Below are positions 21,978 through 60,428 of a stretch of DNA of 64,000 bases, piece after piece. The position numbers were made by a program, and so were the translations under genes. The notes under the pieces are model-generated. The model worked only from the letters and a program-made list of their open reading frames with translations. It was not told the DNA's origin and did no database searches. Each line of letters opens with the position of its first letter. Positions within the stretch are counted from its first letter, which is position 1. The stretch covers positions 124,001 through 188,000 of the forward strand of contig NIVC01000981.1 in NCBI GenBank assembly GCA_002269645.1. Reading direction: 5' to 3'. Source of the DNA: Macrostomum lignano. Its lineage: Eukaryota.

Positions 21978-22570
21978 CCCTATAGGAAAAAGTTGTAAAA
22001 CCGCGGACGGTGTCCGGCGCACTTTTGAAATTTTTCTAAAGCGCAGCGCGCGCACAGGCGCATCGCCTGCGCGCGCGCTGCCCTTTCTTACTGGCTGCTG
22101 CTCTAGCAAATACATATACATGGAAATGGGTATAATACCCCTGTTGAAGGGGCTTATACACTCGTAATTTATTAAGCTTTGAGATGTTCCGAGAATTCAA
22201 TTTCAATTTTCCAAAATTTGAAATTTTTTAGAGCGAATTTCAATTTAGAAAAAAATTTAGAAGTGAAAATTTTGGTAGTGTCTAAAGAGTCGCTAAAAAT
22301 AAACTACTTTCTACTACATATACATGTATTACTTTTTGCTTAAGCAGTAAATTAAAAGTAAAAAAGTGAGTGTTGATCGAACTAAACTTTGTTTTTCTGA
22401 ATTATGATTTCGGAAAATTTCAATTTTGATTTTGGAAAGTTAGCAAATTTTGATTTCGACGAAACTGCAGATCTTTCGGAACATCTCTAATAATCCTAAA
22501 GCGCGGTAAAATAGTTTGACTCTTTTCTAAAGCGCGCGTCCGCGGGTTTTTAACATTTATTCCAATAGGG
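21978..22570. mobile_element. 593-bp non-autonomous DNA transposon (MITE) with 8-bp TSD
   Basis: AGTATATC at 21970-21977 and 22571-22578. Imperfect TIRs CCCTATAGGAAAAAGTTGTAAAACCGCGGACG versus reverse complement CCCTATTGGAATAAATGTTAAAAACCCGCGGACG. Confidence 0.85.
22179..22489. mobile_element. Possible nested hAT-like MITE
   Basis: 14-bp inverted termini T(T/A)GAGATGTTCCGA (13/14 match). Flanks ATTAAGCT/ATAATCCT match 5/8. Confidence 0.5.
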
Positions 22571-24144: not shown

Positions 24145-25890
24145 CAGCATCAGCTCCAACATTCCAGCATCATCCCCAAAATTCCAGCATCATCTTCAAC
24201 ATTCCAGCATCCTCTCCAACATTTCAGCATCCTCTCCAACATTTCAGCATCATCTTCAACATTCCAGCATCACCTCCAACATTTCAGCATCATCTTCAAC
24301 ATTCCAGCATCCTCTCCAACATTCAAGCATCCTCTCCAAAATTCCAGCATCATCTCCAAAATTCCAGCATCATCTCCAACATTCCAGCATCATCTCAAAC
24401 ATTCCAGCATCCTCTCCAAAATTCCAGCATCATCTCCAAAATTCCAGCATCCTCTCCAACATTTCAGCATCACCTCCAACATTCCAGCATCATCTCCAAC
24501 ATTCCAGCATCCTCTCCAACATTCCAGCATCCTCTCCAACATTCCAGCATCATCTCCAAAATTCCAGCATCATCTCAAACATTCCAGCATCATCTCCAAA
24601 ATTCCAGCATCATCTCAAACATTCCAGCATCATCTCCAAAATTCCAGCATCATCTCCAACTTTCCAGCATCATCTCCAACATTCCAGCATCACCTCCAAC
24701 ATTCCAGCATCCTCGCCAACATTCCAGCATCATCTTCAACATTCCAGCATCCTCTCCAACATTCCAGCATCACCTCCAACATTCCAGCATCACCTCCAAC
24801 ATTTCAGCATCCTCTCCAACATTCCAGAATCATCTCCAACATTCCAGCATCCTCTCCAATATTCCAGAATCATCTCCAACATTCCAGCATCCTCTCCAAC
24901 ATTCCAGCATCATCTCCAACATTCCAGCATCATCTCAAACATTCCAGCATCCTCTCCAAAATTCCAGCATCATCTCCAAAATTCCAGCATCACCTCCAAC
25001 ATTCCAGCATCCTCTCCAACATTTCAGCATCACCTCCAACATTCCAGCATCATCTCCAACATTCCAGCATCCTCTCCAACATTCCAGCATCCTCTCCAAC
25101 ATTCCAGCATCATCTCAAACATTCCAGCATCATCTCCAAAATTCCAGCATCATCTCAAACATTCCAGCATCATCTCCAAAATTCCAGCATCATCTCAAAC
25201 ATTCCAGCATCATCTCCAAAATTCCAGCATCATCTCCAACTTTCCAGCATCATCTCCAACATTCCAGCATCACCTCCAACATTCCAGCATCCTCGCCAAC
25301 ATTCCAGCATCATCTTCAACATTCCAGCATCCTCTCCAACATTCCAGCATCACCTCCAACATTCCAGCATCACCTCCAACATTTCAGCATCCTCTCCAAC
25401 ATTCCAGAATCATCTCCAACATTCCAGCATCCTCTCCAATATTCCAGAATCATCTCCAACATTCCAGCATCCTCTCCAACATTCCAGCATCATCTCCAAC
25501 ATTCCAGCATCATCTCAAACATTCCAGCATCATCTCCAAAATTCCAGCATCATCTCAAACATTCCAGCATCATCTCCAAAATTCCAGCATCATCTCCAAC
25601 TTTCCAGCATCATCTCCAACATTCCAGCATCACCTCCAACATTCCAGCATCCTCGCCAACATTCCAGCATCATCTTCAACATTCCAGCATCCTCTCCAAC
25701 ATTCCAGCATCACCTCCAACATTCCAGCATCACCTCCAACATTTCAGCATCCTCTCCAACATTCCAGAATCATCTCCAACATTCCAGCATCCTCTCCAAT
25801 ATTCCAGAATCATCTCCAACATTCCAGCATCCTCTCCAACATTCCAGCATCATCTCCAACATTTCAGCATCCTCTCCAACATTCCAGCAC
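24145..25890. repeat. 20-bp minisatellite (ATTCCAGCATCATCTCCAAC)
   Basis: Exact 20-bp phase maintained over ~1.75 kb. Confidence 0.95.
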
Positions 25891-26437
25891 AACCAAGGAA
25901 AATGTTGCACATTTTGCAGACTTCTGAGCACTCTATACTATATGCACGCGTGTACACACGTTCACACGGTGTGTACACTGGCCCTTTGCGGCTCGAAGGA
26001 CAAAGCCTCACCCCACCACCGCTGCCAAAACTTCGTGCACACCAGCCCCAAATAAATGTGGTTCTACACGTGGAATTGAACCAAGGCTTTTGGTGTGGCA
26101 CAAGAATTAAGACGCGCTTACTCAACCTATCAAAACTTCTTCAGAATCTGACTATAAAATTTGATAAATACAACGTAAAAGAGGCCAGAATTTAGAATTT
26201 AAAACTATTAAACTTGACAACAGTTAATAAATATAACCAACTTTCCATTCCCAACAAACAATGAAGTACATGAAGTATATAGTGAAATTTTCAATAATCA
26301 AAACGCATTTATATATATAGGGGCCTAGGGCAATTTCTGAAAAGACAACTTCAAGCAAGACGCAAGCCACAGAAAAAGGCAATCATTTTGCTTTCAATCT
26401 GTCTGTCCAAACTGAGAGTCTGCACGTGATTGTTGAA

Positions 26438-27039: not shown

Positions 27040-30000
27040 GTGTGTGTGTGTGTCTGTCTGTCTGTCTGTCTGTCTATCTGTCTGTCTGTCTATCAGTCTG
27101 CCTGTCTGTCTGTCTGTCTGTCTGCCTTACATATAGCACACATCAGTGAAAAATATCTCACCTGAATGCCAGACACAGTAAAATATGGGATCTCGAATTT
27201 CACGGCAATCGGCGGCTTCCCATTGCTCTCATCGGTGTCAACCGTAGGCAGTCCAAAATGCGCCCTCATAATGAACTCCTTGCCGCCAGGGAATGCTTTG
27301 ATGCTCCACACCAGAGAGCTGCTCTCGGGCTGGTAGCGGCAGCTGCCCACCGTAGTCTGCGGGGATGGTTGAATTACGTCCATTTGTTCATTGTCTCACA
27401 TGTTCGACTTGACCTTCATTTGTCCCTTTTCGTTTTCAACTTGACTTTATTTTTCTTCCTTAGACTTGAATCCAATTAACTTTCATTTTTTCCTTAGATT
27501 TGATTCCAAATAACCTTCATTTGTTTATTACTTTCGCATTTAATATGAACCTCATTTGTTCCTTAGATTTGGAATCCAAATAACCTTAATTTCCTTTAGT
27601 TTCGTATTCAACTTGATCTTTATTTGCTTCTTAGCTTTGCATCTATAAATCAAAAACAAGAAACATACTAATGATTCTGTAGAAACTTCGAAATGCTTTT
27701 CTAAATACTTATAAACTTTAACAAACTACTGTTGAGTAGAAAGCCAAAAGCCAACCTTGAACTTTGGCGAGTCAACATCGGCAGGCACAGGAATGATGAT
27801 GTCCACATTGTTTGCCGTGCTGCGTCGCTTGAACTGGCTTTTAGCCTGCGAGAGTAGAATGGCGATGACTTAGACATAGATAAGCTTGGATTATTGTTTC
27901 GACAGATTGCAAGGCTGCTTTGTTGACTTTTATACGAGTAGTGGGTTCTATTGTCAGATTAGTAGTAAACTAACACTTCTTAAATTCAAACAAATACTAC
28001 GAGTTTAGTAGATTAGACTACCCTATTGCGGTATATTCTGCTAGCCCAATCAAAAGATTCTACTAACCCATCGGTAGATTCTACTAACCCATCGGTAGAG
28101 TCTACTAACGCATCGGTAGAGTCTACTAACGCATCGGTAGAGTCTACTAACGCATCATTAGAGTCTACTAACGCATCGGTAGAGTCTACTAACCCATCGG
28201 TAGATTCTACTAACCCATCGGTAGAGTCTACTAACGCATCGGTAGAGTCTACTAACGCATCATTAGAGTCTACTAACGCATCGGTAGAGTCTACTAACCC
28301 ATCGGTAGAGTCTACTAATGCATCATTAGAGTCTACTAACGCATCGGTAGAGTCTACTAACCCATCGGTAGATTCTACTAACCCATCGGTAGAGTCTACT
28401 AACCCATCGGTAGATTCTACTAGCCCATCGGTAGAGCCTACTAACCTATCGGTAGAGTCTACTAACGCATCGGTAGAGTCTACTAACCAATCGGTGGATT
28501 CTACTAACCCATCGGTAGATTCTACTAACCCATCGGTAGAGTCTACTAACCCATCGGTAGAGTCTACTAACCCATCGGTAGATTCTACTAGCCCATCGGT
28601 AGAGTCTACTAACCCATCGGTAGATTCTACTAACGCATCGGTAGAGTCTACTAACCCATCGGTAGAGTCTACTAACCCATCGGTAGAGTCTACTAACCCA
28701 TCGGTAGAGTCTACTAACCCAGCGGTAGAGTCTACTAACCCATCGGTGGATTCTACTAACCCATCGGTAGAGTCTACTAACCCATCGGTGGATTCTAATA
28801 ACCCATCGGTGGATTCTACTAACGCATCGGTAGAGTCTACTAACCCATCGGTGGATTCTAATAACCCATCGGTGGATTCTACTAACGCATCGGTAGAGTC
28901 TACTAACCAATCGGTGGATTCTACTCACCCATCGGTATAGTCAAACGCCAATAGATCAAACTCAGCTCACCTTGATCATGTACTCGACTCGACTATGCGC
29001 GTGACGTTCCGCGGCGCATTCAACCCAGATTAGCGGCTTAACCTGAGTATTAAGCCGGTAGGACATCAGCTCAAAGTCACCGTCGGGCGGTATAAAAGAG
29101 ATCGTACGGTCGTTTTCGAACCTTGACAGACGGACGCACTGATGGAATTTGACGTCCTCCAATTCGACAGATTTGCTCTTGCCTCCTGAAAAAATGAAGA
29201 AATGACGAGTATTTAGGATTGAATATGCGAATCCTGCTACTAAATTAATAAGTAAAATAAATAACATTCCATTTTTGCGAATTCAGCTACTTAGTAAGTA
29301 GTGTAATTAGACACTATTTTGTGGATTTAAAATTCGAATTCAGCTACTTAGTAAGTAGTGTAAATAGACACACTATTTTGTGGATATAGAATGCGAATTC
29401 ATCTACTAAGTTAAGTAGTGTCGCTGACATACAATTTTCTCAATTTTCAAAGATAATGAAAAAATCAAACAACTTACTTCCAGTAGCATCGAACAGAACT
29501 TTATCGTTGAGACCCAGCCTCAGTTCGGGCATTCCGCTCAGATAATCTCGCATACGAACGCTGCCAACAATTTCGCTGCGCAACACGTTGCCGCTAACGC
29601 TTACTAACAAATTGACGCTTTCGATAACGTCTAGGAAGACTTCGTTTTTGCGATATTTGATGCCCTCGGAGCGCCACGAGACAGCGTTAGTAACGGCTGG
29701 CGGCAGTTTCGGGGCCACCTCCAGCTTGTGGCTCTCCTGGGTGATGAACTCCTTGTTTTTGGGGAATTTAAAAAGTCAATTATGGGATTTCTATAATTAA
29801 AACGGAGATTCGGATATTAAAAGTAATTAGTAGGGATTAAACTATTCAATTCAAAATTAAATTGTAACTATTGGAAGATGTCAATAGTTAATGGGTAGCG
29901 AATAAGAGATTTTTGAAAACTCTTTTGAGATATCATACATTTGTAATTAATTAGCAGGGATTTGAAAATATCGATAAATGATTAGTAGGGTTAAGATACT

Positions 30001-42771: not shown

Positions 42772-45700
42772 ATGGAAAAGGACAAAGAAAGTCTTCAGAG
42801 TATGAATGATGAAGAGGTAAGTTATCATTTTTTACTTGCTACTTTTTTAATAAATAAATTGTTTAACATGTTAAGACACTAAGCTAACATAACTTAAAAT
42901 TTAGGCATTTGAAGATGCTGTTGAGTTTCTATCTGATGATGAAGCTGAAGATCAAGATGCAGTGTAAGTGATTAGGTTTTTATTTAAAATATCAATTCTG
43001 TATGCAGGCATGTCTCAGCACTAATTTAATTTTTCTTTTCACAGTGTAAATGGTGTTGATTCTGCAATGGCCTTGGAACGAGAGGAATCAGCCTCTCAGT
43101 TGCTAGGGGATGCCGCTCAACAGCCTCCTTTGCCGCCACCAGCTGACTTGCCAGACTTGCTCCAGTCGATTGGCGAAGCTCAAAATGCTCTAGACCTGTT
43201 CCTTAGTAACCAGTTTGAGAAGGCCAGGGCCGTAATAGAACCGCTGTGAATTGTTTTTTAAATCACTTGAAATGTACTTTAGGTTATAAATGGCGCCAAT
43301 ATTAGATATCGATGACGCCATTATTAAATACCGATGACGCCATTGTTAGATATCGATGGCGTTATTACTAAATATCGATGACGCCATTGTTAGATATCGA
43401 TGACGCTATTATTAGATATCGATGACGCCATTATTGGATATCGATGACGCCATTATTAAATATCGGTGACGCCATTGTTAGATATCGATGACGCTATTAT
43501 TAGATATCGATGACGCTATTATTAGATATCGATGGCGTTATTATTAAATATCGATGACGCTATTATTAGATATCGATGACGCCATTATTAGATATCGATG
43601 ACGCCATTACTAGATATCGATGACGCCATTATTAGATATCGATGACGCCATTATTAGATATCGATGACGCTATTATTAGATATCGATGACGCTATTATTA
43701 GATATCGATGGCGCCATTGTTAAATATCGATGACGCTATTATTAGATATCGATGACGCTATTATTAGATATCGATGACGTCATTATTAAATATCGATGAC
43801 ACTATTATTAGATATCGATGACGCAATTACTAGATATCGATGGCGCCATTGTTAGATATCGATGACGCTATTATGAGATATCGATGACGCTATTATGAGA
43901 TATCGATGGCGTAATTATTAAATATCGATGACGCTATTATTAGATATCGATGACGCTATTATTAGATATCGATGACGCTATCATTAGATATCGATGACGC
44001 TATTATGAGATATCGATGACGCTATTATGAGATATCAATGGCGTAATTATTAAATATCGATGACGCTATTATTAGATATCGATGACGCTATTATTAGATA
44101 TCGATGACGCCATTATTAGATATCGATGAGGTCATTATTAAATATCGATGACACTATTATTAGATATCGATGACGCAATTACTAGATATCGATGGCGCCA
44201 TTGTTAGATATCGATGACGCTATTATTAGATATCGATGACGCTATTATTAGATATCGATGAAGCTATTATTAGATATCGATGGTGTAATTATTAAATATC
44301 GATGACGCTATCATTAGATATCGATGACGCCATTATTAGATATCGATGACGCCATTATTAGATATCGATGACGTCATTATTAAATATCGATGACACTATT
44401 ATTAGATATCGATGACGCAATTATTAGATATCGATGACGCCATTAATAGATATCCAGTAGTCAGATAAGACACAGAAAATGTCACACATTTGATGACACC
44501 AACAATACCCAGGTCGGCCACATCCATGTACCACAGCCTGGGCTACGCCACCATCTGCTACCTGCAGGCCTCCATGACTATGGAGCGCCCTAACATACAG
44601 CAGGCTTTGGACGCCACTAAACAGGGCCTGCAAGTCTCTCAGCGGCTACGACGCCGAGGCTTCGTAGCGTCTCGTCAGCCGAACGATTTCACTGACGAGC
44701 AGTGCCACGCTGAGCTGTGCTACGCTGAGTTGTTATTAGAAAAAGCTGTGCTCACGTTTCTTCAGGACGAGAATTTTATTGCTTTTGTCAAGGTAAATTT
44801 GCCTGATGGTTTTGAATACACTCGTATAAAACAAATCTTTTAAAATGGACTCTAGATCGATTTCACTGTAAACAAAGACCACATTTCACTGTGAACAAAG
44901 ACCACATTTCACTGTGAACAAAGACCACATTTCACTGTGAACAAAGACCACATTTCTTTGTGAACAAAGACCACATTTCACTGTAAACAAAGACCACATT
45001 TCACTGTGAACAAAGACCACATTTCACTGTGAACAAAGACCACATTTCACTGTGAACAAAGACCTGATTTTACTGTGAAGAAAGACCACATTTCCTGTGA
45101 ACAAAGACCACTTTTCACTGTGAACAAAGAACTGATTTTACTGTGAAGAAAGACCACATTTCACTGTGAAAAAGACCACAATTCAGACCACAAAGACCAG
45201 AGTTCATCATAAAAACGTCCAATTAAATTTTTGTGCAAACAAAGACAAAAACTGTAAATCGACTGAGTTCGACGTTAACAAAGATCAGATTTGAGTTGAA
45301 AAATACCAATCAGACTGTTAACACGCTGAACAAAGACAGACAGAGTCTATATGTACAGAGACTGGATTAAGCTGAACAAAGACTGAGTTATCTGTACAGA
45401 GATTGGATTAGGCTAAACAGACTAAGTTATCTGTACAGACTAGATTAGGCTAAACAAAGACTGAGTTATCTGTACAGACTAGTTTAGGCTGAAAAAAAGA
45501 CTGAGTTATCTGTTCGGACTAGATTAGGCTGAACAAAGACTGAGTTATCTGTTCGGACTAGATTAGGCTGAACAAAGACTGAGTTATCTGTTCAGACTAG
45601 ATTAGGCTGAACAAAGACTGAGTTATCTGTACAGACTAGATTAGGCTGAACAAAGACTGAGTTATCTGTTCAGACTAGATTAGGCTGAACAAAGACTGAG

Positions 45701-48700
45701 TTATCTGTTCAGACTAGATTAGGCTAAACAGACTGAGTTTATCTGTACAGCGACTGGCTTAGACTGAACAAAGACCGCATCACAACAATCCAATCCAGGG
45801 CGGTATCAAGATTCGCGAGTGCTACAAAGCCTACAAAGAGTGCTGGCGCCTGTTGCACAAGCGCCGCTGGTTGAACGCCGAACTGCGCTTGCATTTCGAA
45901 AGCGGCGCTAGAATTGGAGAAGGCGCTTTCAATCTGCTGCTGAGTCTGCTGCCGCCCCGACTTCTCAGACTGTTGGAGTTCGTTGGATTCTCCGGCGACA
46001 GGCGATACGGACTCGAGCAGGTTCGGCTGGCCACCGAGTTGGACGGCAGTGTCCGGGCACCCCTGGGCAGGATTATACTGCTAGTCTATCACACTACCTT
46101 TGCTCATATCCTGGGTGCCGGAGGCTGCGATTTAGCCGCTGTCCACCAGCTGTTGGAGCCCTGCTTAGCTGCTCACCCTGATGGGGCTATGTTCCTGTAC
46201 TTTCAGGTGAGTATATAAGGGCATTTCTAGCGGTGGATTTGCTCTTTAGCTTCCACGGAGGGTCAATGACCCCTCCGGCATGAATCTAGGCGTAAGTCTT
46301 AGATTCTAATTGGCTCTTTATTTCTTGTGGGGGGGGGGTTCAATGACCCCCCTGATTCTAGGGGTAAGTGGTAGATTTTAATTGGCTCTTTATTTCTTGT
46401 TGGGGGGGGGGTCAATGACCCCTCTCCATGATTCTAGGTGTAAGTAGTAGATTCCAATTGGCTCTTAGTTTCTTTTAGGGGGTCAATGACCCCTCATGAT
46501 TCTACGTCTAAGTAGCAGATTTTAATTGGCTCTTTTTTTCTTTTTGGGGGGGTCAATGACCCCTCTCCATGATTCTAGGTGTAAGTAGTAGATTCCAATT
46601 GGCTCTTAGTTTCTTCTGGGGGGTCAATGACCCCTCATGATTCTAGGTCTAAGTAGCAGATTTTAATTGGCTCTTTATTTCTTGTGGGGGGTCAATGACC
46701 CCCTGATTCTAGGGGTAAGTGGTAGATTTTAATTGACTCTTTATTTCTTGTTGGGGGGGGGGGTCAATGACCCCTCTCCATGATTCTAGGTGTAAGTAGT
46801 AGATTCCAATTGGCTATTAGTTTCTTTTGGGGGTCAATGACCCCTCATGATTCTAGGTCTAAGTAGCAGATTTTAATTGGCTCTTTATTTTTGTGGGGTC
46901 AATGACCCCTCTCATGATTCTGAGGTTAAGGTATTATATTCTAATTAGCGCTTAGTTTTTTGTGGGGTCAATGACACCCGATGATTCTTAAACCCTTATT
47001 GGCTGATTGTTTTTAGAGGCTGGGAGTTAATGGCCTCTCCTGTCGCTATTTAATGTACCGCTTTCAAAAGTTCTGAATAGGGTGATTTGCTTTCATTTGG
47101 GGATGGGGTCAATGGCCCCATATATTGTTGGTTGGATAGGATTCTGATTTATCTTGCTTTTTCTCTATGGAGGTCAATGACCTCCTTATAAAAAACTCTC
47201 CTGAAGTTTCTGATTATTTATCAAACTCAAATTCAGGGCCGTCAGCAGCTGCTATCCGGCAACTCGCACCGAGCTATCCAAGCATTCGAGCGCAGCATTG
47301 AAAGCCAGACCGAATGGATCCAACTGCATCTGGTCTGCTACTGGGAGCTAATGTGGACTCAAGCTTACAAAGCCGATTGGCTATTGGCTATGAAATACGC
47401 CGAGATACTAGCCAAAGAGTCCCGATGGAGTAAGGCCACGCTGGTCTATCAGAAGGCGGCATTTCTTTACCAATACCAGAATGGCGCCGGGACAGGAGAT
47501 GAGGGCGCCAAGGCTGCGACTGGCGATGAAGAGCACGTTGCCGGTTTGATGGACAAGGTGTGAGCTTTTCATTCCTAGCACGTGTCTGTCATAACCTAAA
47601 CCCTGAGCATACTTTTCTCCATACCTGTCAGTCAATAGAGTCCTAAACATGCCATTCCCCACACCTGTCAATCAATAGGATCCTCAGCATGCCATTCCCC
47701 ACACCTGTCAATCAATAGGATCCTCAGCATGCCATTCCCCACACCTGTCAATCAATAGGACCCTCAGCATGCTATTCCCCACACCTGTCAATCAATAGGA
47801 CCCTCAGCATGCTATTCCCCACATCTGTCAATCAATAGGATCCTCAGCATGCCATTCCCCACACCTGTCAATCAATAGGACCCTCAGCATGCTATTCCCC
47901 ACACCTGTCAATCAATAGGACCCTCAGCATGCTATTCCCCACATCTGTCAATCAATAGGATCCTCAGCATGCCATTCCCCACACCTGTCAATCATTATGA
48001 TTCTCAGCATGCTATTCCCCACACCTGTCAATCAATAGGACCCTCAGCATGCTATTCCCCACACCTGTCAATCATTATGATTCTCAGCATGTCATTTCCC
48101 ACACCTGTCAATCATTATAATCTTCAGCATGCCATTCGCCACACCTGTTAGTCATTATGATTCTCAGCATGCCATTCTCCACACCTGTCAATCAATAGGA
48201 TCCTCAGCATGCCATTCCCCACACCTGTCAATTATTATAATCTTCAGCATGCCATTCCCCACACCTGTCAATTATTATAATCTTCAGCATGCCATTCTCC
48301 ACACCTGTCAATCAATAGGATCCTCAGCATGTCATTCCCCACACCTGTCAATCATTATAATCTTCAGCATGCCATTCCCCACACCTGTCAATCAAAAGGA
48401 TACTACTGTATACATGCCATTCCCCACACCTGTCAATCAATAGGACCCTCAGCATGCTATTCCCCACATCTGTCAATCAATAGGATCCTCAGCATGCCAT
48501 TCCCCACACCTGTCAATCAATAGGACCCTCAGCATGCTATTCCCCACACCTGTCAATCAATAGGACCCTCAGCATGCTATTCCCCACATCTGTCAATCAA
48601 TAGGATCCTCAGCATGCCATTCCCCACACCTGTCAATCATTATGATTCTCAGCATGCTATTCCCCACACCTGTCAATCAATAGGACCCTCAGCATGCTAT

Positions 48701-51123
48701 TCCCCACACCTGTCAATCATTATGATTCTCAGCATGTCATTTCCCACACCTGTCAATCATTATAATCTTCAGCATGCCATTCGCCACACCTGTTAGTCAT
48801 TATGATTCTCAGCATGCCATTCTCCACACCTGTCAATCAATAGGATCCTCAGCATGCCATTCCCCACACCTGTCAATTATTATAATCTTCAGCATGCCAT
48901 TCCCCACACCTGTCAATTATTATAATCTTCAGCATGCCATTCTCCACACCTGTCAATCAATAGGATCCTCAGCATGTCATTCCCCACACCTGTCAATCAT
49001 TATAATCTTCAGCATGCCATTCCCCACACCTGTCAATCAAAAGGATACTACTGTATACATGCCATTCTCCACACCTGTCAATCAAAAGGATCTACTGTAT
49101 ACATGCCATTCCCCACACCTGTCAATCATTATAATCTTCAGCATGTCATTCCCCACACCTGTCAATCATTATAATCTTCAGCATGCCATTCTCCACACCT
49201 GTCAATCAATAGGATCCTACTGTATGCATGCCATTCCCCACGCCTGTCAATCATAATCAAATATGCCAGTCACTCGCTACACCTGCCAATCATAATCCTA
49301 AAACTGTCATTCATTATACATTGTCATCAATACTCATTGCCTGTCAATCGCAACTGACACCAGTCACTCACCCCCACCACCGCTCAGGTGCCCCGCCTAT
49401 ACAAGCGCATCGCTGGCAAGAGTTTGCCAATAGAAAAGTTCGCCATGCGCCGGGCTCGCCGATTCGCCGAACAGGGCGGCCGGCTCACCCTGCCGGGCCT
49501 GGAGGTGGTCTACGTGTGGAACGGCTTCCCTTTAGTTGGTTGCGAAGGCCCTGACGTGGTTCGTTCGTTTTTAGCGGCCGTTGATTTGGCCTCCGACCAG
49601 CTGGACAGAGGCCGGGTCACCTCAGGTCAGGGCGACTCTGCGCAGGCTGGTGGCAGCTGACCCTATCCTGACGATGACGCCGCTCTGATTCTGCTGCTTC
49701 GAGGCGCCTGTTTAAAACAGTTGAATCAGACTGAGGCTGCCGACAAGTGCTTTCAGGTGTGTAGGTTGTACAGCTTCAATTTATGTTGAGTGTGATTGAT
49801 TGACAAGTGCGGGTAATTTTAAAGTTATGATTATGGTTGACTCTTGTAGGATTTCGCGTATAATTGACAGGTGTAGGGTTAGGGTTATGATTGACAGGTG
49901 TAGGGTTAGGGTTATGATTGACAGGTGTAGGGTTAGGGTTATGATTGACAGGTGTAGGGTTATGGTTATGATTGACAGGTGTAGGGTTAGGGTTATGATG
50001 GACAGATGTAGGGTTAGGGTAATGATTGACAGGTGTAGGGTAATGGTTATGATTGACAGGTGTAGGGTTAGGGTTATGATTGACAGGTGTAGGGTTAGAG
50101 TTATGATTGACAGGTGTAGGGTTAGGGTTATGATTGACAGGTGTAGGGCTAGGGTTAAGATTGAGAGGTGTAGGGTTAGGGTTATGATTGACAGGTGTAG
50201 GGTTAGGGCTAAGATTGAGAGGTGTAGGGTTAGGGTTATGATTGACAGGTGTAGGGTTAGGGTTATGATTGACAGATGTAGGGTTAGGGTTATGACTGAC
50301 AGGTGTAGGGTTAGGGTTATGATTGACAGGTGTAGGGTTAGGGTTATGATTGACAGATGTAGGGTTAGGGTTATGATTGACAGATGTAGGGTTAGGGTTA
50401 TGATTGACAGATGTAGGGTTAGGGTTATGATTGACAGATGTAGGGTTAGGGTTATGATTGACAGATGTAGGGTTAGGGTTATGATTGACAGATGTAGGGT
50501 TAGGGTTATGATTGACAGATGTAGGGTTAGGGTTATGATTGACAGATGTAGGGTTAGGGTTATGATTGACAGATGTAGGGTTAGGGTTATGATTGACAGA
50601 TGTAGGGTTAGGGTTATGATTGACAGATGTAGGGTTAGGGTTATGATTGACAGATGTAGGGTTAGGGTTATGATTGACAGATGTAGGGTTAGGGTTATGA
50701 TTGACAGATGTAGGGTTAGGGTTATGACTCACAGGTGTAGGGCTAGGGTTATGACTGACAGGTGTAGGGCTAGGGTTATGATTGACAGGTGTGGATAATG
50801 ATATGAATGACTTGTCCTGCATGTTAGCAGGTAAAGAGAAAACAGCCAGTTAACCCGCTGGTCACCTTGTTAATTGCCCAACCATCCATCAGGAAATCGT
50901 CGACGATCGCCTTGCCCGCCGTATCCGGCAAGATCGTCACGTGATCGCCTGGGCCTGGCTGGAGCTGGCCCACCTGCGCCTGGACGAGGGCCGCCGGCCG
51001 GAGGCCTCCGCCTGCATTGATGCCTGTCTGTCTTGCCGCGGGATCAGCTTGGAATCTCGAATTCACTTCCGGGCGCACGCCCTGGCGCTGTCTATGGCTG
51101 AGACCGCCTCGGCCGCTAAGTAG
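42772..51123 (+). CDS. TTC39B: Tetratricopeptide repeat protein 39 (TTC39A/B-like, IML2 family), 8 exons, with one in-frame TGA at 49658-49660
   Basis: Exons 42772-42816, 42905-42963, 43045-43245, 44513-44792, 45799-46206, 47237-47557, 49388-49756, 50893-51123, all phase-compatible. Motifs SMYHSLGYATI, HAELCYAELLL, DENFIAFVKGGIKIR, LLEFVGFSGDR, RIAGKSLPIEKFA and SLESRIHFR. The A versus B assignment is uncertain. Confidence 0.85.
43295..44450. repeat. 22-bp minisatellite (GATATCGATGACGCTATTATTA)
   Basis: TTC39 intron 3. Confidence 0.95.
44860..45770. repeat. Two adjacent minisatellites: 23-bp (AAAGACCACATTTCACTGTGAAC, ~44860-45200) and 39-bp (~45370-45770)
   Basis: TTC39 intron 4. Confidence 0.9.
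46255..47190. repeat. ~70-bp minisatellite, each unit carrying the palindrome GGGTCA-A-TGACCC
   Basis: TTC39 intron 5. About 13 motif copies, regular to ~46980 and degenerate after. Confidence 0.9.
47640..49260. repeat. 40-bp minisatellite (CATGCCATTCCCCACACCTGTCAATCAATAGGATCCTCAG) with an internal 645-bp duplication
   Basis: TTC39 intron 6. Identical ORF translations at 47969/48614 show the 645-bp offset, and near-identical pairs at 48129/48774 and 48329/48974 agree. Confidence 0.95.
49860..50790. repeat. 27-bp minisatellite (GTTATGATTGACAGRTGTAGGGTTAGG)
   Basis: TTC39 intron 7. Confidence 0.95.
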
Positions 51124-51399
51124 CTGCCTGTGTTTTTAAGCCTCAGAGTAACCGCGATCGAATTGATTTTTTTACGGCCGGGGCATTTTAACTTGAGGAT
51201 CATGCATCTCGGATTTGTCAGATTGTCTCTTTTTACCGATTTTTGAGATCGCCATCTCAGATGTTAATTCTTATTTATGTCTAATTCTTTATGTTTTTAA
51301 GGCCGTGACCCCAGATTTTCGGTAATGACCTTGGATTTCACGGTCGTTACCGCAGCTCTTTGAGGTTGTGACCTCAGCTTTCTTCGGGCAATGACCTCA

Positions 51400-51880
51400 G
51401 ATTATTAGGGTCGTGAACTCAGACATTTCTTAGGCTCGTGACCTTAGATTTCTTAGGGTCGTGACCTTAAATTTCTTAGGGTCGTGACCTTAGATTTCTT
51501 AGGGTCGTGACCTTAGATTTCTTAGGGTCGTGACCTTAGATTTCTTAGGGTCGTGACCTTAGATTTCTTAGGGTCGTGACCTTAGATTTCTTAGGGTCGT
51601 GACCTTAGATTTCTTAGGGTCATGACCTTAGATTTCTTAGGGTCGTGACCTTAGATTTCTTAGGGTCGTGACCTTAGATTTCTTAGGGTCGTGACCTTAG
51701 ATTTCTTAGGGTCGTGACCTTAAATTTCTTAGGGTCGTGACCTTAGATTTCTTAGGGTCGTGACCTTAGATTTCTTAGGGTCGTGACCTTAGATTTCTTA
51801 GGGTCGTGACCTCAGACTTCTTAGGGTCGTAAACTCAGATTTCTTATGTTCGTGACCTCAGATTTCTCAGGGTCGTGACC
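51400..51880. repeat. 23-bp minisatellite (GACCTTAGATTTCTTAGGGTCGT)
   Basis: Downstream of the TTC39 stop. Confidence 0.95.
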
Positions 51881-52414
51881 TTTAAATTCTTAAAAATTTT
51901 AGATTTCCTCACCGTCTGAATCACTACTGTTAGTAGAGCTGTCGGAAAATATAAATGTACTAAAATCGCATCTAATACCAAATCCAGCTTGTGTGATTGC
52001 TTATACTTTTTTTCAACAAAGAAAGCATTTCCAGTCGCCATACATATTGCTGGCACTGGTCACTCTCTTGATTGCGTTTTTTGTTGACATGGATACAATG
52101 AACAGTTTATATTATTTTTGTTTTACTCAAGCCATCATGCCTAGCGGTATCTAAAATCCTTTTTCTTCTTTTTTTTTCTTATTTTCGTTTCTGTCTGCCT
52201 ATATATTTGGAGCCCTGTTGATCTTGAATATCCCTGTTTATCAAAAATGATTCATTAAATGGATTTGTCTGTTGAAATCATTATTTAGTAATAATTTTCG
52301 TTGTCTGTTGTCCAGCGCCATTATATAGTTTTTGTTTAGTATGGAAATTTGATACTGACGATAATATTGATGGTTTAATTGTTAATCATTTGTTTGGTAT
52401 TCATTCTCTGGGGG

Positions 52415-53155
52415 TCTCAGTTGCTGGGTCACCAGCCTCCCAGATCCTCAGTTGCTGGGCCAGCCTCCCAGATCCTCAGTTGCTGGGCCACCAGCCTCCC
52501 AGATCCTCAGTTGCTGGGCCAGCCTCCCAGATCCTCAGTTGCTGGGCCAGCCTCCCAAATCCTCAGTTGCTGGACCAGCCTCCCAGATCCTCAGTTGCTG
52601 GGTCACCAGCCTCCCAGATCCTCAGTTGCTGGGTCACCAGCCTCCCAGATCCTCAGTTGCTGGACCAGCCTCCCAGATCCTCAGTTGCTGGGCCAGCCTC
52701 CCAGATCCTCAGTTGCTGGGCCACCAGCCTCCCAGATCCTCAGTTGCTGGGTCACCAGCCTCCCAGATCCTCAGTTGCTGGACCAGTCTCCCAGATCCTC
52801 AGTTGCTGGGCCAGCCTCCCAGATCCTCAGTTGCTGGGCCACCAGCCTCCCAGATCCTCAGTTGCTGGACCAGCCTCCCAGATCCTCAGTTGCTGGGTCA
52901 CCAGCCTCCCAGATCCTCAGTTGCTGGGCCAGCCTCCCAGATCCTCAGTTGCTGGGCCAGCCTCCCAGATCCTCAGTTGCTGGACCAGCCTCCCAGATCC
53001 TCAGTTGCTGGGCCAGCCTCCCAGATCCTCAGTTGCTGGGCCACCAGCCTCCCAGATCCTCAGTTGCTGGACCAGCCTCCCAGATCCTCAGTTGCTGGGC
53101 CAGCCTCCCAGATCCTCAGTTGCTGGGCCAGCCTCCCAGATCCTCAGTTGCTGGG
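52415..53155. repeat. 28/31-bp minisatellite (GGGCCAGCCTCCCAGATCCTCAGTTGCT)
   Basis: Tandem array open in all three + frames because the unit lacks stops. Confidence 0.95.
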
Positions 53156-53719
53156 CTAGCCCTTAGATTCCTAAGCAAGCAGCGATAGATCATCAAGGCG
53201 CATTCCTAATTAAAATTGTGTTGTTTATTTTCACTCACTGTTAGCAGTGAATTCCAAAGAAACTTGATATTTTTTCTAAGTGTTTGCAGTGATCTGCTTT
53301 CTCGCCACTGCAGCACATTTCAAATTTTCAAAGCCATGATATTTGCTCCGTTTTAACAAACTTTTTTCTCGTAGGCCCCCTTAGCATACTCGTAGTTTTT
53401 TTACTCTGTTGTTTTTACTTACAAACTATTTTAATGGTTTTGAGTCAACAAACTCTATTAATCTGAGAATAGATTTTTGCATTCGCAAACGTTTTATCAA
53501 GCGATACTAATTTATTTTGCTTCCTACTGATAGTAGGCTGTTGTTGTTTTTAATAAATAAGAGTTTCTTTTATTACAATATAATTTTGTGTTTTCAATTT
53601 GAAATTATTAAATTAATTGTGGATTAAATTTTGCTTTAATTTATTTCAAAGTGACGATAGATATTGAATAAAATACGTTGCACGATATGTATCGAGAAGG
53701 TGCAGTCTCTGAGACATTA

Positions 53720-54316: not shown

Positions 54317-55485
54317 ATGCTTATCACAATCAAAAGTCAATATGTTTTCATAAAACCTCGGGGTTGTTGCTGACAGTTGAAAACTAATTAATTAGCTTGA
54401 GCCTACTAAATAATTTACTACCAGAAATGGCACTTCAAACACTACTGCGTACTGATGAATCTAATTGTTTATTCTAAGCTAAGAATGCTGAGTATACTAA
54501 ATCAACGAGTTTGGTTTTGTATTACATGTAATTAGTCGGACGCTATAGGGTGGGAACGCGTCCGATTCTGGCTCTAAAGTACCTGCATGTGCATGTACAT
54601 GTATACAATGTACATGTACCTCAGTTGGATGATCGTGAGCGACCATCGCTAATTTGAGACTTTTGGGAATTGTCGAGATCCATTTGGAACTCGTGAGAGC
54701 CAACCTCCAACAACATGCCTATCGATGAGAAAGTTAAAGAGATACCATCATCTCCACACATGGCTGATGTACGAAGGCATGACCAAAATGTATGTAAAAA
54801 GGTAGCTCGTAACATTAAACATAATTTGATCTAGTTGTTGGCGTTTACCAAACAATGAACCTGTAGTTCAGCTATACATGTACATGTGAAAATAGATTAG
54901 CGAGCTCAGATACACATGCATTATTAATTTTTTTATTAAACTGGGACTGTTTAGTTATGATCACGCTACTGCACTTTCTTTTATTACGTACAGCGATCGT
55001 TTGCCTTTAGTTTTACAGAATCCGAAGTCGGGACAGTAAAAAAAGACCAATGCATGTTTTATATATAGGCTACTAAGTACTGCATAGCGTCGTTCTTGAT
55101 TTTTAATTTATAGAAATTAATTGTTTTCCATTCCGAAACAGCTTTTCGACGGAAGAGGCACGATACGTTTTTGCGATATAAAAGCAAGAACCCAAAACCT
55201 TAATTAGTTGTGACGTGTGGCACTTGGCAGATGACAGGCAGCATTGTTACCTTTTTCAGTCATGTCAAATAAATTAAAGACAATTGAAGTTGTCACCTGC
55301 CAAAAGCTTTCAAGTTAAGCTTTCAAAAGCCAACAACACACTGCCGCCAATATAATTAAATTAAATACTCTGCATTGTGTTCCAAGTTGATATATAAATT
55401 TCATCTTTCGAATTGATTGAAGCCTGCATCTTCAGCGGTCTAAAGCTCCATTCAAAGCCAAGACTTCAGATTCGACACAGAACAT

Positions 55486-56940
55486 ATGGAACTAGCAACA
55501 CTTATATTAAGATGGTGGATTCTTGCCACACTGTTGAACATCTTGGCTTGCAAGACTGACTGGGAAGCTGAAACCAAGGTGCTGCCGAAATTCGCCGCGA
55601 CAAAGACCCGACGCTGCCCCACCGCGGCCGCCTCTCCGCTGCCGCACCGCCTGGCCAGCAAGCTGCAGTGTGCCGCCGCCTGCTCCCGACTGCCCACCTG
55701 CAACGCATTTCACTTCGACATCACCACCCGCCAGTGTTACCATGGAGACGCGTGTTCCCAACTCGAGCAATGGACTGACGGCGACTGCGACTCTTACAAG
55801 TACACCGATGTGCTGTGCGGAGACTGCGGTGAGCGGCTCAGTCCCTGCTGTCTTGACAATTCTGTACAAGGACCACTTCGTTCTTAGTCTATCATTTAGT
55901 TTGTAGGAAAATTTATTATAATTCCCGATCCCACTAGAACGACTTGTGTTCTTGAGCAAGACACTTAACTCTGCATTGCTTCAGTTCACCCAGCTGTAAA
56001 ATGGGTGCCTGCATTAGCTGGGGTAATTGAGGGTGTGTGTGGCGACCTTCCCCCCAGTCCTTGGACTGAACAGCCGTACACAGTCTTCAGATGCGCTGCG
56101 CAATAGCTGCGGCTGAGCTGTCGTTTGTACATCTGCCCATTGTAATCAATTGTTTTTTAATTCACTGCAGAGTCTACTGAGCCCCTGGTCAAACCGCTCA
56201 AGCTGAAGCTGTTCTACAAGTTCTCTCGGAGCGGTCTGAAGAATGAGGTCAACCCGAGACTGTCCTGTCTCAAGGCTCACGATGTGACAGTTGATGCAGC
56301 TGGTGCTCACTTCAATGGTAACACGGGCTCCTACCTGAGCACTAACACACCTGGATTTGAGAAGTTCCTTCAGGTTGGCACGGAGTATTCAGTGTTCACC
56401 AAAATATATCACGGCATGGACACGGGGTGAGTGAGCAGATTTTATGCAATCCAGTTTGCAGAGTCACAAATGCAGCAGCCTAATCGGAGTCCCACGCCTC
56501 CACCTGGAAATCCTGGTAGAACCCGGTACTACAGCCGGTTCCAAGAGTGCAACGGCTCGAATCCGGGCAGCTCATTCATCAAGTCGACAGGCCTGGTGTA
56601 CGGATTCAGCTGGGTGGCCAGCAGCGGCTATGGTGAGGGCACATTCGGCTTGTCTGCCAGCTTCCTGCCCAGCGATGGCCTGCCGCGTGGACTATCAGCC
56701 GGCATCACCTTCAACCAGACTGTTCACCAGAGAGTCTATCACAATGGAACTTTGGCGCCCGTAGCAACAATTAACACAGTCTCTGCTAATATCTCAACGG
56801 CCGTGTTTCAGTGCCTCAGGTTGGGCTATGGCGCAGTTGATGCCCAGTGCCTGAATGGAGAGATGGCCTGCTTTGGACTGAGTGCTAAGCTGCTCAGTCT
56901 TGAAGACTTTGACCAGCTGAGTCAAATCTGCAATGAGTGA
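55486..56940 (+). CDS. Secreted PAN/apple-domain + LamG/concanavalin-A-like protein, 339 aa, 3 exons
   Basis: Exons 55486-55828, 56171-56426, 56520-56940 (last acceptor chosen by phase). It has a hydrophobic signal peptide, the PAN motif CAAACSRLPTCNAFHF...QCY, and LamG-like AHFNGNTGSYL and LNGEMACFGLSAKLLSLEDF. Confidence 0.75.
55921..56075 (+). mobile_element. 5'-truncated copy of the CORE-type SINE
   Basis: Near-identical to 3040-3158. It lies in intron 1 of the PAN gene. Confidence 0.75.
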
Positions 56941-57700: not shown

Positions 57701-58034
57701 GAAAGGATATTAGTAATTAGTATCATGGGATTAGAAAAAGGAATCCATTCAGACCAGCAAGGCAAGCGAGACGATTAAAACGATCATTCAGAAGACATTT
57801 TGCGCGGTGTATCCTAAGTGCGCTAAAAAGATAGTGCTTTAAATTTATATTTTTATTTAATTTAGGCGGAGACTTTCGCATGGCAACAAAGACGAGAACA
57901 ATTAGCATATTTATAACAATTTAAACACCGACTGAAGCAGCAATTTAAGTGCATTAATTTTTCTGCCTGATTTAATAGCATAACTGAGATACTGAAATCT
58001 GTTAGTGATACTCAAAATATAGTATCAGGAGAGG

Positions 58035-59085
58035 GTCATACGCAGGGTGAGGAGGGGAGAGGGAGATACGGAGGGTTAGAAGGGAAGAGGGTGATACGCA
58101 GGGTGAGGAGGGGAGGAAGAGGGAGATACGGAGGGTTAGGAGGGGAGAGGGTGATACGGAGGGTGAGGAGGGGAGAGGGTGATACGGAGGGTGAGGAGGG
58201 GAGAGGGAGATACGGAGGGTGAGGAGGGGAGAGGGTGATACGGAGGGTGAGGAGGGGAGAGGGTGATACGGAGGGTGAGGAGGGGAGAGGATGATATGGA
58301 GGGTGAGGAGGGGATAGGGTGATACGGAGGGTGAGGAGGGGAGAGGGAGATACGGAGGGTGAGGAGGGGAGAGGGAGATACGGAGGGTGAGGAGGGGAGA
58401 GGGAGATACGGAGGGTGAGGAGGGGAGAGGGTGATACGGAGGGTGAGGAGGGGAGAGGGAGATACGGAGGGTGAGGAGGGGAGAGGGTGATACGGAGGGT
58501 GAGGAGGGGAGAGGGTGATACGGAGGGTGAGGAGGGGAGAGGGTGATACGGAGGGTGAGGAGGGGAGAGGGAGATACGGAGGGTGAGGAGGGGAGAGGGT
58601 GATACGGAGGGTGAGGAGGGGAGAGGGTGATACGAAGGGTGAGGAGGGGAGAGGATGATATGGAGGGTGAGGAGGGGAGAGGGAGATACGGAGGGTGAGG
58701 AGGGGAGAGGGAGATACAAAGGGTGAGGAGGGGAGAGGATGATATGGAGGGTGAGGAGGGGAGAGGGTGATACGGAGGGTGAGGAGGGGAGAGGATGATA
58801 TGGAGGGTGAGGAGGGGAGAGGGTGATACGGAGGGTGAGGAGGGGAGAGGGTGATACGGAGGGTGAGGAGGGGAGAGGGAGATACAAAGGGTGAGGAGGG
58901 GAGAGGGAGATACGGAGGGTGAGGAGGGGAGAGGGTGATACGGAGGGTGAGGAGGGGAGAGGATGATATGGAGGGTGAGGAGGGGAGAGGGTGATACGGA
59001 GGGTGAGGAGGGGAGAGGGAGATACGCAGGGTGAGGAGGGGAGAGGGTGATAAGGATGGGTGAGGAGGGAATAGGGAGATACGGA
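58035..59085. repeat. 28-bp G-rich minisatellite (CGGAGGGTGAGGAGGGGAGAGGGWGATA)
   Basis: Tandem array. Confidence 0.95.
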
Positions 59086-59639
59086 GAAACCATTAGAAAT
59101 CGTAGTAGTACAATATAGAGGAATAAGCAGAGAACAGCTACGAACAGGATATGAAGTTCATTGTCACAATTGAGTTACAATTGTTACCCCCTTGCTGCGA
59201 TGAAAAACTCCAGAAAAAAAGGCTATGACTTTATTCCAATCAGAGCGTCACATATGGAAGAGAGCGAATGGACAATAATACCAACTACACTGCAGAGGTG
59301 TAACGTTTTTACAGCAACAAAAAAGTAAAAACAAGACCTTCTCTGTCAGAATATGCATATACATCTGCAAAAATAGGCCAAACAAACAACATCTTTAATA
59401 TACAATTGAGAAATTATGTTTGCTAGTTTTTTATAATAAGCGACGTTACAGTTTTGTAGATTTGGTATAGATTTAAATTTAACTTGCTTGATTGAAGCAA
59501 CAATTAAATTTTATCCGGTTTAATTACCTTTAGAGAGAGAAAATGTTTAATGAAATGATTCTAAGCACATGTCTACTTCACTTTTTAGGAACATAAAAAA
59601 TCCAACAAATTAATTTGGTACTACCAATAACGAGGGTGG

Positions 59640-60428
59640 GTTATGTCTGTCTCTGTCTGTCTCAGTGTCTGTCTCAGTGTATGCCTCAGTGTCTGTCTAT
59701 GTCTGCCTCAGTGTATGCCTCAGTGTCTGTCTATGTCTGCCTCAGTGTCTGTCTATGTCTGTCTCAGTGTCTGTCAGTGTCTGCCACAGTGTCTGTCTAT
59801 GTCTGTCTCAGTGTCTGCCTCAGTGTCTGTCTCAGTGTCTGTCTCAGTGTCTGTCTCAGTGTCTGTCCCAGTGTCTGTCCCAGTGTCTGTCTCAGTGTCT
59901 GTCAGTGTCTGCCTCAGTGTCTGCCTCAGTGTCTGTCTCAGTGTCTGTCTTAGTGTCTGTCTCAGTGTCTGTCTCAGTGTCTGTCTCAGTGTCTGTCTCA
60001 GTGTATGCCTCAGTGTCTGTCTATGTCTGCCTCAGTGTCTGTCTATGTCTGTCTCAGTGTCTGTCAGTGTCTGCCTCAGTGTCTGTCTATGTCTGTCTCA
60101 GTGTCTGTCAGTGTCTGTCTCAGTGTCTGTCTCAGTGCCTGAATCAGTGCCTGTCTCAGTGTCTGTCTCAGTGTCTGTCTCAGTGTCTGTCTCAGTGTCT
60201 GTCTCAGTGTCTGTCTATGTCTGTCCCAGTGTCTGCCTATGTCTGTCTCAGTATCTGTATCAGTGTCTGTCTCAGTGTCTGTATCAGTGTCTGTCTCAGT
60301 GTCTGTCTCAGTGCCTGTCTCAGTGCCTGTCTCAGTGCCTGTCTCAGTGCCTGTCTCAGTGCCTGTCTCAGTGTCTGTCTCAGTGCCTGTCTCAGTGCCT
60401 GTCTCAGTGCCTGTCTCAGTGCCTGTCT
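59640..60428. repeat. 12-bp minisatellite (GTCTCAGTGTCT)
   Basis: Directly downstream of the RSPRY1 stop. Confidence 0.95.

What the first reader, a model, noticed from the sequence alone, without database searches (positions are those of the whole stretch)
49388..49756. In-frame TGA in the middle of an otherwise intact TTC39 exon
Seen: exon 7 reads ...GDSAQAGGS-TGA(49658-60)-PYPDDDAALILLLRGACLKQL...KCFQ, and exon 8 continues in frame to SLESRIHFR. All 8 exons are otherwise undamaged. Known: DDxxLxxLLxGxCL and SLESRxHFR are conserved TTC39 C-terminal motifs, and UGA followed by C is the leakiest stop context. The stop sits in a non-conserved Gly/Ser/Ala linker, where an inserted residue would be tolerated. 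Inference: the options are programmed readthrough, A-to-I correction of UGA to UGI (read as Trp), a regulated truncation/NMD switch, a null allele, or an assembly error. A weak 78-nt GT-AG intron (49626-49703) could also remove the stop in frame, but it would delete the conserved DDDAALILLLR.
Basis: partly seen in the sequence, partly recalled or inferred. Interest (0 to 1): 0.8.

Follow-up and report, generated by a model that had tools for sequence, protein, structure and literature searches.

The report
Nonsense mutation in one TTC39 gene copy
One of the three near-identical copies of a TTC39 gene in the recently genome-duplicated flatworm Macrostomum lignano has a Trp codon (TGG) changed to a stop (TGA), which is an ordinary early step in losing a redundant duplicate and shows no sign of stop-codon recoding.

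Summary
TGA at 49658-49660 is in frame in exon 7 of an otherwise intact 8-exon, 637-codon TTC39 gene (Pfam PF10300, E=4e-127).

The window is 100% identical to Macrostomum lignano assembly Mlig_3_7, contig NIVC01000981.1. GenBank already annotates this gene (BOX15_Mlig029209g4, PAA74016.1) as ending at this stop.

Three other contigs of the same assembly carry the gene, and all read TGG (Trp) at this codon. They represent two distinct paralogues, one of which was assembled twice. This fits the published finding that the assembly holds three paralogous subgenomes differing by about 1.1% in coding sequence. The window copy differs from the others by 15-16 substitutions in 1914 nt, so the stop is one ordinary G-to-A difference.

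Nothing points to recoding:
- No SECIS element.
- No unusual RNA structure at or after the stop.
- No readthrough motif beyond the C that follows UGA.
- The flanking sequence is the same in the TGG copies.

An older gene model (UniProt A0A1I8IDU8) skips the stop with a 54-nt intron that removes a conserved motif.

Best reading: a real, recent nonsense substitution (W529*) in one redundant homeologue. An assembly error is unlikely but not excluded. Editing or readthrough cannot be tested without reads. Interest is low.

The parts
42772..42816 (+). TTC39 coding exon 1 (ATG at 42772)
   Evidence: tblastn of P0001 against the window, and splice-site reading
42905..42963 (+). TTC39 coding exon 2
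43045..43245 (+). TTC39 coding exon 3
44513..44792 (+). TTC39 coding exon 4. The GenBank partial CDS PAA74016.1 starts here.
45799..46206 (+). TTC39 coding exon 5
47237..47557 (+). TTC39 coding exon 6
49388..49756 (+). TTC39 coding exon 7 (369 nt, 123 codons, both ends at codon boundaries). It contains the premature stop.
49658..49660 (+). Premature TGA at codon 529. The three other genomic copies read TGG (Trp). It lies 96 nt upstream of the last exon-exon junction.
49714..49714 (+). Second difference specific to the window copy, also G to A and synonymous (TTA versus TTG). It lies 54 nt downstream of the stop, so a single short read can link the two sites and assign them to this copy.
49650..49703 (+). 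54-nt GT-AG interval used as an intron by the older gene model UniProt A0A1I8IDU8 to skip the stop. It deletes GS-W-PYPDDDAALILLLRG. Most likely a gene-prediction artefact.
49626..49703 (+). It is in frame and deletes the same conserved motif. The same sites are present in the TGG copies.
50893..51123 (+). TTC39 coding exon 8, containing SLESRIHFR and the normal TAG stop at 51121-51123

Best explanation
This is a real G-to-A substitution that turned Trp codon 529 (TGG) into TGA in one of the three paralogous (homeologous) copies of a TTC39 gene in the neopolyploid flatworm Macrostomum lignano (line DV1).

Inferred consequences:
- This copy encodes at most a 528-residue protein. It lacks the last 109 residues, which include the end of the Iml2/TTC39 domain, a TPR-like stretch (weak, sub-threshold Pfam matches) and the SLESRxHFR motif.
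- Its mRNA is a likely nonsense-mediated decay target, because the stop lies 96 nt before the last exon junction.
- The organism tolerates the loss because two intact homeologues remain.
- The rest of the gene looks undamaged because the mutation is young. This would be the first step of duplicate-gene loss after whole-genome duplication.

Shown here: the stop, its uniqueness to this copy, the intact paralogues and the identity of the locus. Inferred: loss of function, decay of the transcript and tolerance through redundancy.
For: 1. Locus identity. The window is 100% identical over 13 kb to NIVC01000981.1 of GCA_002269645.1. The GenBank protein PAA74016.1 (BOX15_Mlig029209g4) is 100% identical to the window model and ends exactly at ...AQAGGS.

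2. Other copies. Three other contigs (L001, L003, L004) carry all 8 exons with TGG at codon 529.

3. Number of distinct sequences. L001 and L004 show 0 substitutions over the exons and introns 1-6 (about 6.2 kb) and differ only by small indels. That leaves three distinct sequences. This matches the published picture: three paralogous subgenomes, 1.1% CDS SNP rate, and 4-copy blocks that mostly contain erroneously represented paralogues (PMC10733133).

4. Ordinary divergence. The window copy differs from L001 by 15 and from L003 by 16 substitutions in 1914 nt, with no indels. The stop is one of 9 differences specific to the window copy. Another lies only 54 nt away.

5. Reproducibility. The assembly was polished with Illumina DNA and RNA-seq reads (PMC5730564). 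The older ML2-based model A0A1I8IDU8 carries the window-type residues and skips 54 nt around the stop, which implies the same TGA in that assembly.

6. No recoding signals. No Rfam hit reached gathering score anywhere in the window, and there was no SECIS hit at E<=10 in 49300-53300. Folding z-scores are -0.14 and -0.15.

7. Functional family. pN/pS among the three paralogues is 0.16-0.31, so the family is under purifying selection and the intact copies are functional.
Against: - No raw genomic or RNA reads could be examined, so the base call rests on the published consensus.
- ML2 and Mlig_3_7 were built from the same PacBio data, so their agreement is not fully independent.
- The same assembly does contain uncorrected 1-nt indels in coding sequence (L004 versus L001), so it is not error-free.
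- The window copy shows no relaxed constraint relative to its paralogues. That fits a very recent mutation, but it would also fit a copy that is still functional by some other means.
- Expression, NMD and loss of function are inferred, not shown.
Confidence: 0.8

Rival explanations
1. Assembly or polishing error. The true sequence of this copy is TGG, and the A at 49660 is a consensus mistake in a hard-to-assemble triplicated genome.
For: The assembly has uncorrected errors in coding sequence: L004 carries two 1-nt deletions relative to the otherwise identical L001, which produces the spurious truncated protein PAA93012.1. The literature reports that 93% of read pairs map to multiple loci, which weakens short-read polishing (PMC10733133).
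Against: The visible errors are indels, as expected for PacBio data. L001 and L004 show 0 substitutions in about 6.2 kb, whereas real paralogue divergence in this CDS is about 0.8%. The TGA survived Pilon polishing with both DNA and RNA reads. The independently built ML2 gene model implies the same stop. A second window-specific SNP 54 nt away lets single reads be assigned to this copy.
Confidence: 0.08
2. Functional recoding. The UGA is decoded as an amino acid, either by A-to-I editing (UGA to UGI, read as Trp) or by programmed or near-cognate readthrough (UGA-C context). Either route would restore the Trp encoded by the sister copies.
For: Both editing and near-cognate decoding by Trp-tRNA would give the ancestral residue. 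The downstream ORF is still intact.
Against: The stop is unique to one of three copies, so it is not a conserved feature. Sequence around the stop is the same as in the TGG copies, apart from one synonymous site 54 nt downstream, so no dedicated element has evolved there. The known UGA-CUAG motif is absent; the sequence reads UGA CCC UAU. Local RNA folding is no more stable than shuffled sequence, with z = -0.14 and -0.15, so there is no readthrough stem-loop or ADAR-type duplex at the site. An intact downstream ORF is expected anyway for a young mutation.
Confidence: 0.04
3. Splicing rescue. Transcripts of this copy avoid the stop by using a cryptic 54- or 78-nt intron (49650 or 49626 to 49703), or by skipping exon 7 (369 nt, frame-preserving). 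This would yield an internally deleted protein.
For: Both cryptic intervals have GT-AG ends and keep the frame, and skipping exon 7 also keeps the frame. The gene's own shortest introns are 81 and 88 nt, so 78 nt is not far out of range. A published gene model uses the 54-nt interval.
Against: Each event removes strongly conserved residues. The two Asp, Leu, Leu-Leu, Lys/Arg and Gly columns are 84-99% conserved across 120 homologues. Exon 7 also holds RIAGKSxPIEKF and VWNGF. The same cryptic sites exist in the TGG copies, and GenBank models exon 7 of L001 and L003 as unspliced (P0001, P0121). The ML2 model is an automatic prediction and probably placed the intron only to avoid the stop.
Confidence: 0.03
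4. A functional truncated paralogue. The 528-residue product is stable and has a distinct or partial function, for example a regulatory or dominant-negative TTC39 lacking its C-terminal TPR helices.
For: The truncated product keeps residues 1-528, which is most of the PF10300 domain. The window copy shows no excess of missense changes. GenBank annotates a CDS that ends at this stop.
Against: The missing 109 residues include the most conserved C-terminal motifs of the family. The stop position predicts NMD under the exon-junction rule. No other TTC39 in the top 120 hits shows a comparable natural C-terminal truncation, apart from partial models.
Confidence: 0.05

Closest known systems
Homeologue-specific nonsense mutation (early pseudogenisation or fractionation) after whole-genome duplication
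   Same: There is one disabling point mutation in one of several near-identical duplicates, intact sister copies remain, and the rest of the gene is undamaged. The organism is a documented neopolyploid with three paralogous subgenomes (PMC10733133).
   Different: It has not been shown that this copy is silent or non-functional. The subgenome (S, L1 or L2) carrying it was not determined.
Programmed stop-codon readthrough genes of animals (e.g. the UGA-CUAG class)
   Same: An in-frame UGA is followed by C, with an open, conserved reading frame downstream.
   Different: The stop is not conserved even among paralogues of the same genome. There is no CUAG motif and no downstream structure. Here the downstream frame is the ancestral body of the protein, not an evolved extension.
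A-to-I recoding of stop codons by ADAR
   Same: Editing UGA to UGG would give Trp, which is the residue encoded by the sister copies.
   Different: No predicted duplex includes the site (z about -0.15). No RNA evidence is available. The simple genomic explanation suffices.
Selenocysteine (UGA) recoding
   Same: An in-frame UGA in an otherwise intact CDS.
   Different: No SECIS element was found. Homologues have Trp or Ser/Asn/Tyr at this column, never Cys or Sec. TTC39 is not a known selenoprotein family (own knowledge).

Membership tests
TTC39 / Iml2 (Pfam PF10300) | Full-length match to the Iml2-TPR_39 profile above the gathering score | tested here: met
   425 bits against a cut-off of 22.2, E=4e-127, profile positions 2-467 of 467. 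Identity to TTC39A/B of molluscs, brachiopods and vertebrates is 38-47%.
Nonsense allele or young pseudogene of a duplicated gene | A disabling mutation absent from paralogous copies | tested here: met
   TGA in the window versus TGG in L001, L003 and L004.
Nonsense allele or young pseudogene of a duplicated gene | Intact, constrained sister copies able to supply the function | tested here: met
   P0001 (637 aa) and P0121 (643 aa) are full length. pN/pS is 0.16-0.31.
Nonsense allele or young pseudogene of a duplicated gene | Relaxed constraint or further decay in the disabled copy | tested here: inconclusive
   The window branch has 5 synonymous, 3 conservative missense and 1 nonsense change, similar to the other branches. 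There are too few sites to decide.
Nonsense allele or young pseudogene of a duplicated gene | Reduced or absent expression, or NMD, of the disabled copy | not testable with these tools
   No read-level data were available. The stop lies 96 nt upstream of the last exon junction, which meets the 50-55 nt rule known from mammals.
Programmed stop-codon readthrough | The stop codon is conserved among relatives, with a conserved downstream frame | tested here: not met
   The stop is unique to one copy. The paralogues encode Trp and other species encode sense codons.
Programmed stop-codon readthrough | A stimulatory context (UGA-CUAG or a downstream stem-loop) | tested here: not met
   The context is UGA CCC UAU. 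The 96 nt downstream fold with z = -0.14.
Selenocysteine recoding | A SECIS element in the transcript | tested here: not met
   No Rfam hit at gathering score in the whole window. No SECIS family at E<=10 in 49300-53300.
ADAR A-to-I recoding site | The site is embedded in a stable RNA duplex | tested here: not met
   The 121 nt around the site fold with z = -0.15. The repeat arrays in the flanking introns share only about 15-nt complementary cores with different periods.
ADAR A-to-I recoding site | An RNA-DNA A/G difference at the site | not testable with these tools
   No reads or transcript contigs of this species were reachable.

The most novel reading that the evidence does not exclude
The TGA-bearing homeologue is transcribed, and its UGA is efficiently decoded as Trp, either by A-to-I editing or by near-cognate readthrough in the UGA-C context. 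A copy that looks null would then still supply wild-type TTC39 protein. This would be a case of RNA-level or translational rescue buffering early gene loss in a neopolyploid.
Probability: 0.03. Interest if true: 0.6.

Novelty: new member of a known kind. Interest (0 to 1): 0.1.

Why it matters
On its own it matters little. It is one premature stop in one of three redundant gene copies, and the public annotation already ends the CDS there.

Its modest value is as a clean, datable example of the first step of duplicate-gene loss in a very young polyploid animal: a single G-to-A change with everything else intact. The 2023 subgenome paper contains none of the search terms 'pseudogen', 'stop codon', 'nonsense' or 'gene loss'. 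A genome-wide census of such homeologue-specific stops, split by subgenome, could therefore show whether fractionation is biased.

It is also a practical warning for gene knockout and annotation work in this model. Copies differ in integrity, and gene predictors have produced three different wrong or partial models for this gene.

Tried and rejected
- First homologue search, with exon 7 alone (X at the stop), found nothing. Only the full-length query worked.
- Third homologue search, with the C-terminal 237 aa, aimed at transcript fragments from M. lignano or sister species. It returned only distant TTC39s at 35-38% identity and no Macrostomum fragments.
- Exact-pattern scan of metagenome contigs around the stop, with R at the variable base: 0 matches.
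- Supplement and full-text searches for the scaffold and gene identifiers, to assign the copy to subgenome S, L1 or L2: nothing found.
- Selenocysteine was rejected: no SECIS element and no Cys or Sec in homologues.
- A 31-nt GT-AG interval (49626-49656) was considered by eye and rejected. It is too short, and it shifts into a frame that has stops (frame 1).
- Reassignment of UGA to Trp was rejected. This is a nuclear, intron-containing gene, the annotated paralogues use the standard code, and all the other exons lack in-frame TGA.

Full report
**Observation**

Exon 7 (49388-49756, + strand) translates in frame 0 to ...GDSAQAGGS*PYPDDDAALILLLRGACLKQL...KCFQ. The only stop is TGA at 49658-49660, followed by C.

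I rebuilt the gene from the sequence and from a tblastn of the best homologue. It has eight coding exons: 42772-42816, 42905-42963, 43045-43245, 44513-44792, 45799-46206, 47237-47557, 49388-49756 and 50893-51123. All are bounded by AG/GT. They give a 1914-nt CDS of 637 codons plus TAG, in frame throughout, with one internal stop at codon 529.

The protein is a clear TTC39/Iml2 family member (PF10300, 425 bits, E=4e-127). It is 38-47% identical to TTC39A/B of many animals.

**Where the window comes from**

The best database hit is 99% identical: Macrostomum lignano BOX15_Mlig002017g3 (P0001). Its 90% cluster holds six M. lignano proteins.

One of them, PAA74016.1 (BOX15_Mlig029209g4, a partial CDS of 426 aa), is 100% identical to the window model and ends exactly at ...AQAGGS, that is, at the TGA. 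Its contig, NIVC01000981.1 of assembly GCA_002269645.1 (Mlig_3_7), is 100% identical to the window over the 13 kb compared. Window position equals record position minus 124000. The stop is therefore already in the public annotation as the end of a CDS.

**The other copies**

Three further contigs of the same assembly carry all eight exons: L001 (NIVC01001914.1), L003 (NIVC01002619.1) and L004 (NIVC01000035.1). At codon 529 all three read TGG (Trp). The window alone reads TGA.

L001 and L004 show no substitutions across the exons and introns 1-6 (about 6.2 kb) and differ only by small indels. They are therefore the same paralogue assembled twice. That leaves three distinct sequences:
- The window copy differs from L001 by 15 substitutions and from L003 by 16, in 1914 nt, with no indels.
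- Singleton differences split 9: 6: 7 among the three sequences, a star-like pattern.
- The long introns differ mainly in the length of their tandem arrays.

This matches the literature. The Mlig_3_7 assembly of the inbred DV1 line consists of three paralogous subgenomes (S, L1, L2). Their SNP rate is 2.2% overall and 1.1% in CDS, all three have similar divergence, and most 4-copy blocks contain erroneously represented paralogues (PMC10733133). The assembly is described as substantially redundant (PMC5730564). The TGA is thus one ordinary G-to-A difference between homeologues. A second window-specific G-to-A change, synonymous (TTA versus TTG), lies only 54 nt downstream at 49714.

**Is it an assembly error?**

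This cannot be excluded without reads, but several points argue against it:
- The errors visible in this assembly are 1-nt deletions. L004 has two of them in exons 7 and 8, which explains the odd truncated protein PAA93012.1 ending ...DDDAL.
- The duplicated pair L001/L004 shows zero substitution discrepancies in about 6.2 kb, against about 0.8% real divergence in this CDS.
- The assembly was polished with Pilon using Illumina DNA and RNA-seq reads.
- The nearby linked SNP allows copy-specific read placement.
- The older ML2-based UniProt model A0A1I8IDU8 has every window-type residue but lacks 18 codons, corresponding to a 54-nt GT-AG interval at 49650-49703. That is what a gene predictor does to avoid a stop, so the TGA was evidently present in that assembly too.

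One caveat applies. Both assemblies used the same PacBio data, so their agreement is not fully independent.

**Tests of the recoding ideas**

- Selenocysteine: no Rfam family reached its gathering score anywhere in the window. No SECIS hit appeared even at E<=10 in 49300-53300. Homologues never have Cys at this column.
- Readthrough: the context is UGA CCC UAU, so only the +4 C is favourable. The 96 nt downstream fold no better than shuffled sequence (z = -0.14).
- Editing: the 121 nt around the site fold with z = -0.15.
- No dedicated element: apart from the stop base and the synonymous SNP 54 nt downstream, the window's sequence around the stop matches that of the TGG copies. No element dedicated to decoding a stop can have evolved here.
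- Splicing: the 54-nt and 78-nt cryptic GT-AG intervals and whole-exon-7 skipping all preserve the frame. Each removes residues that are 84-99% conserved across 120 homologues, namely DD, L, LL, K/R and G. The same cryptic sites are present in the copies that do not need them.

Residual leaky decoding of UGA-C by Trp-tRNA would happen to restore the ancestral residue. Nothing suggests this is more than background.

**Selection**

Pairwise pN/pS among the three paralogues is 0.16-0.31, so the family is constrained. The window branch carries 5 synonymous, 3 conservative missense (I/M, V/I, E/D) and 1 nonsense change. That is indistinguishable from the other branches, as expected if the nonsense mutation is recent.

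**Likely consequence (inferred)**

- The product would be 528 aa and would lack the last 109 residues. Those include the end of the PF10300 domain, a TPR-like stretch (weak, sub-threshold Pfam matches) and SLESRxHFR.
- The stop lies 96 nt before the last exon junction, so the mRNA is a plausible NMD substrate.
- Two intact homeologues remain, which would explain why the loss is tolerated.

**Verdict**

The best explanation is a real, young, homeologue-specific nonsense substitution (W529*) in a neopolyploid genome, with confidence about 0.8. It is an ordinary example of incipient duplicate-gene loss.

The remaining probability is spread as follows:
- Assembly error: about 0.08.
- A functional truncated form: about 0.05.
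- Recoding: about 0.04.
- Splicing rescue: about 0.03.

Interest is low (0.1). The decisive test is copy-resolved inspection of the public DV1 DNA and RNA reads at 49660, phased with 49714.

Noticed in passing
L004:13896-14263 and L004:15321-15550 (NIVC01000035.1, BOX15_Mlig029209g1): This contig is substitution-identical to L001 over about 6.2 kb, but it has 1-nt deletions in exon 7 (GACGCCGCT to GACG-CGCT) and exon 8. These produce the truncated GenBank protein PAA93012.1, which ends ...DDDAL. They are most likely uncorrected long-read indel errors in a paralogue that was assembled twice.
   Followed up: partly
window 49650-49703: UniProt A0A1I8IDU8 (from the older ML2 annotation) removes this 54-nt GT-AG interval as an intron. 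This deletes 18 codons, including the stop and the conserved DDxxLxxLL(K/R)G motif. It is probably a prediction artefact that hides the premature stop.
   Followed up: yes
window 43300-44454, 44860-45185, 45338-45775, 46260-46988, 47615-49253, 49859-50792; also 51364-51882 and 52416-53161 downstream: Every long intron of the gene is largely filled by a different tandem array, with periods of 22, 23, 39, 68, 40 and 27 nt. Two further arrays lie just downstream of the gene. Array lengths differ between the homeologues and account for most of the intron length differences.
   Followed up: partly
window 47615-49253 (intron 6) and 49859-50792 (intron 7): The two arrays flanking exon 7 share a core of about 15 nt in opposite orientation (CACACCTGTCAATCA versus TGATTGACAGGTGTG). 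This gives 131 short inverted-repeat pairs (the longest 25 span 27-40 nt at 70-89% complementarity). The periods differ (40 versus 27 nt), so no long duplex is expected. Any effect on exon 7 splicing, back-splicing or editing is unknown.
   Followed up: partly
window 50863-51153 versus 43246-44512: Similarity to the paralogues looks mosaic. Exon 8 plus its flanks is 100% identical to L003 and has 5 mismatches to L001. Introns 3-4 are far closer to L001 (99.8% and 97.1%) than to L003 (89% and 76%, though those alignments are weakened by repeat arrays). This could reflect exchange or gene conversion between homeologues, or a chimeric assembly.
   Followed up: no
window 27096-29775 (- strand): Three open stretches match the adaptor-complex medium (mu) subunit family PF00928 (E = 2e-17 to 1.5e-24, consecutive parts of the profile). 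This is an AP mu-adaptin gene on the opposite strand, upstream of TTC39.
   Followed up: partly
window 55444-55884 (+) and 56431-56937 (+): Long open stretches downstream of TTC39. The first has a weak, sub-threshold PAN-domain match (E = 0.0013, 18.9 bits against a cut-off of 21.4). The second has no Pfam match. Possibly an unannotated gene.
   Followed up: partly
window 10001-24000, 24001-26000 and 58001-60000: Blocks with extreme GC skew (+0.3 to +0.57, and -0.69 at 24-26 kb). In the one block whose translations were listed (from about 59.6 kb), the frames are low-complexity repeats.
   Followed up: no
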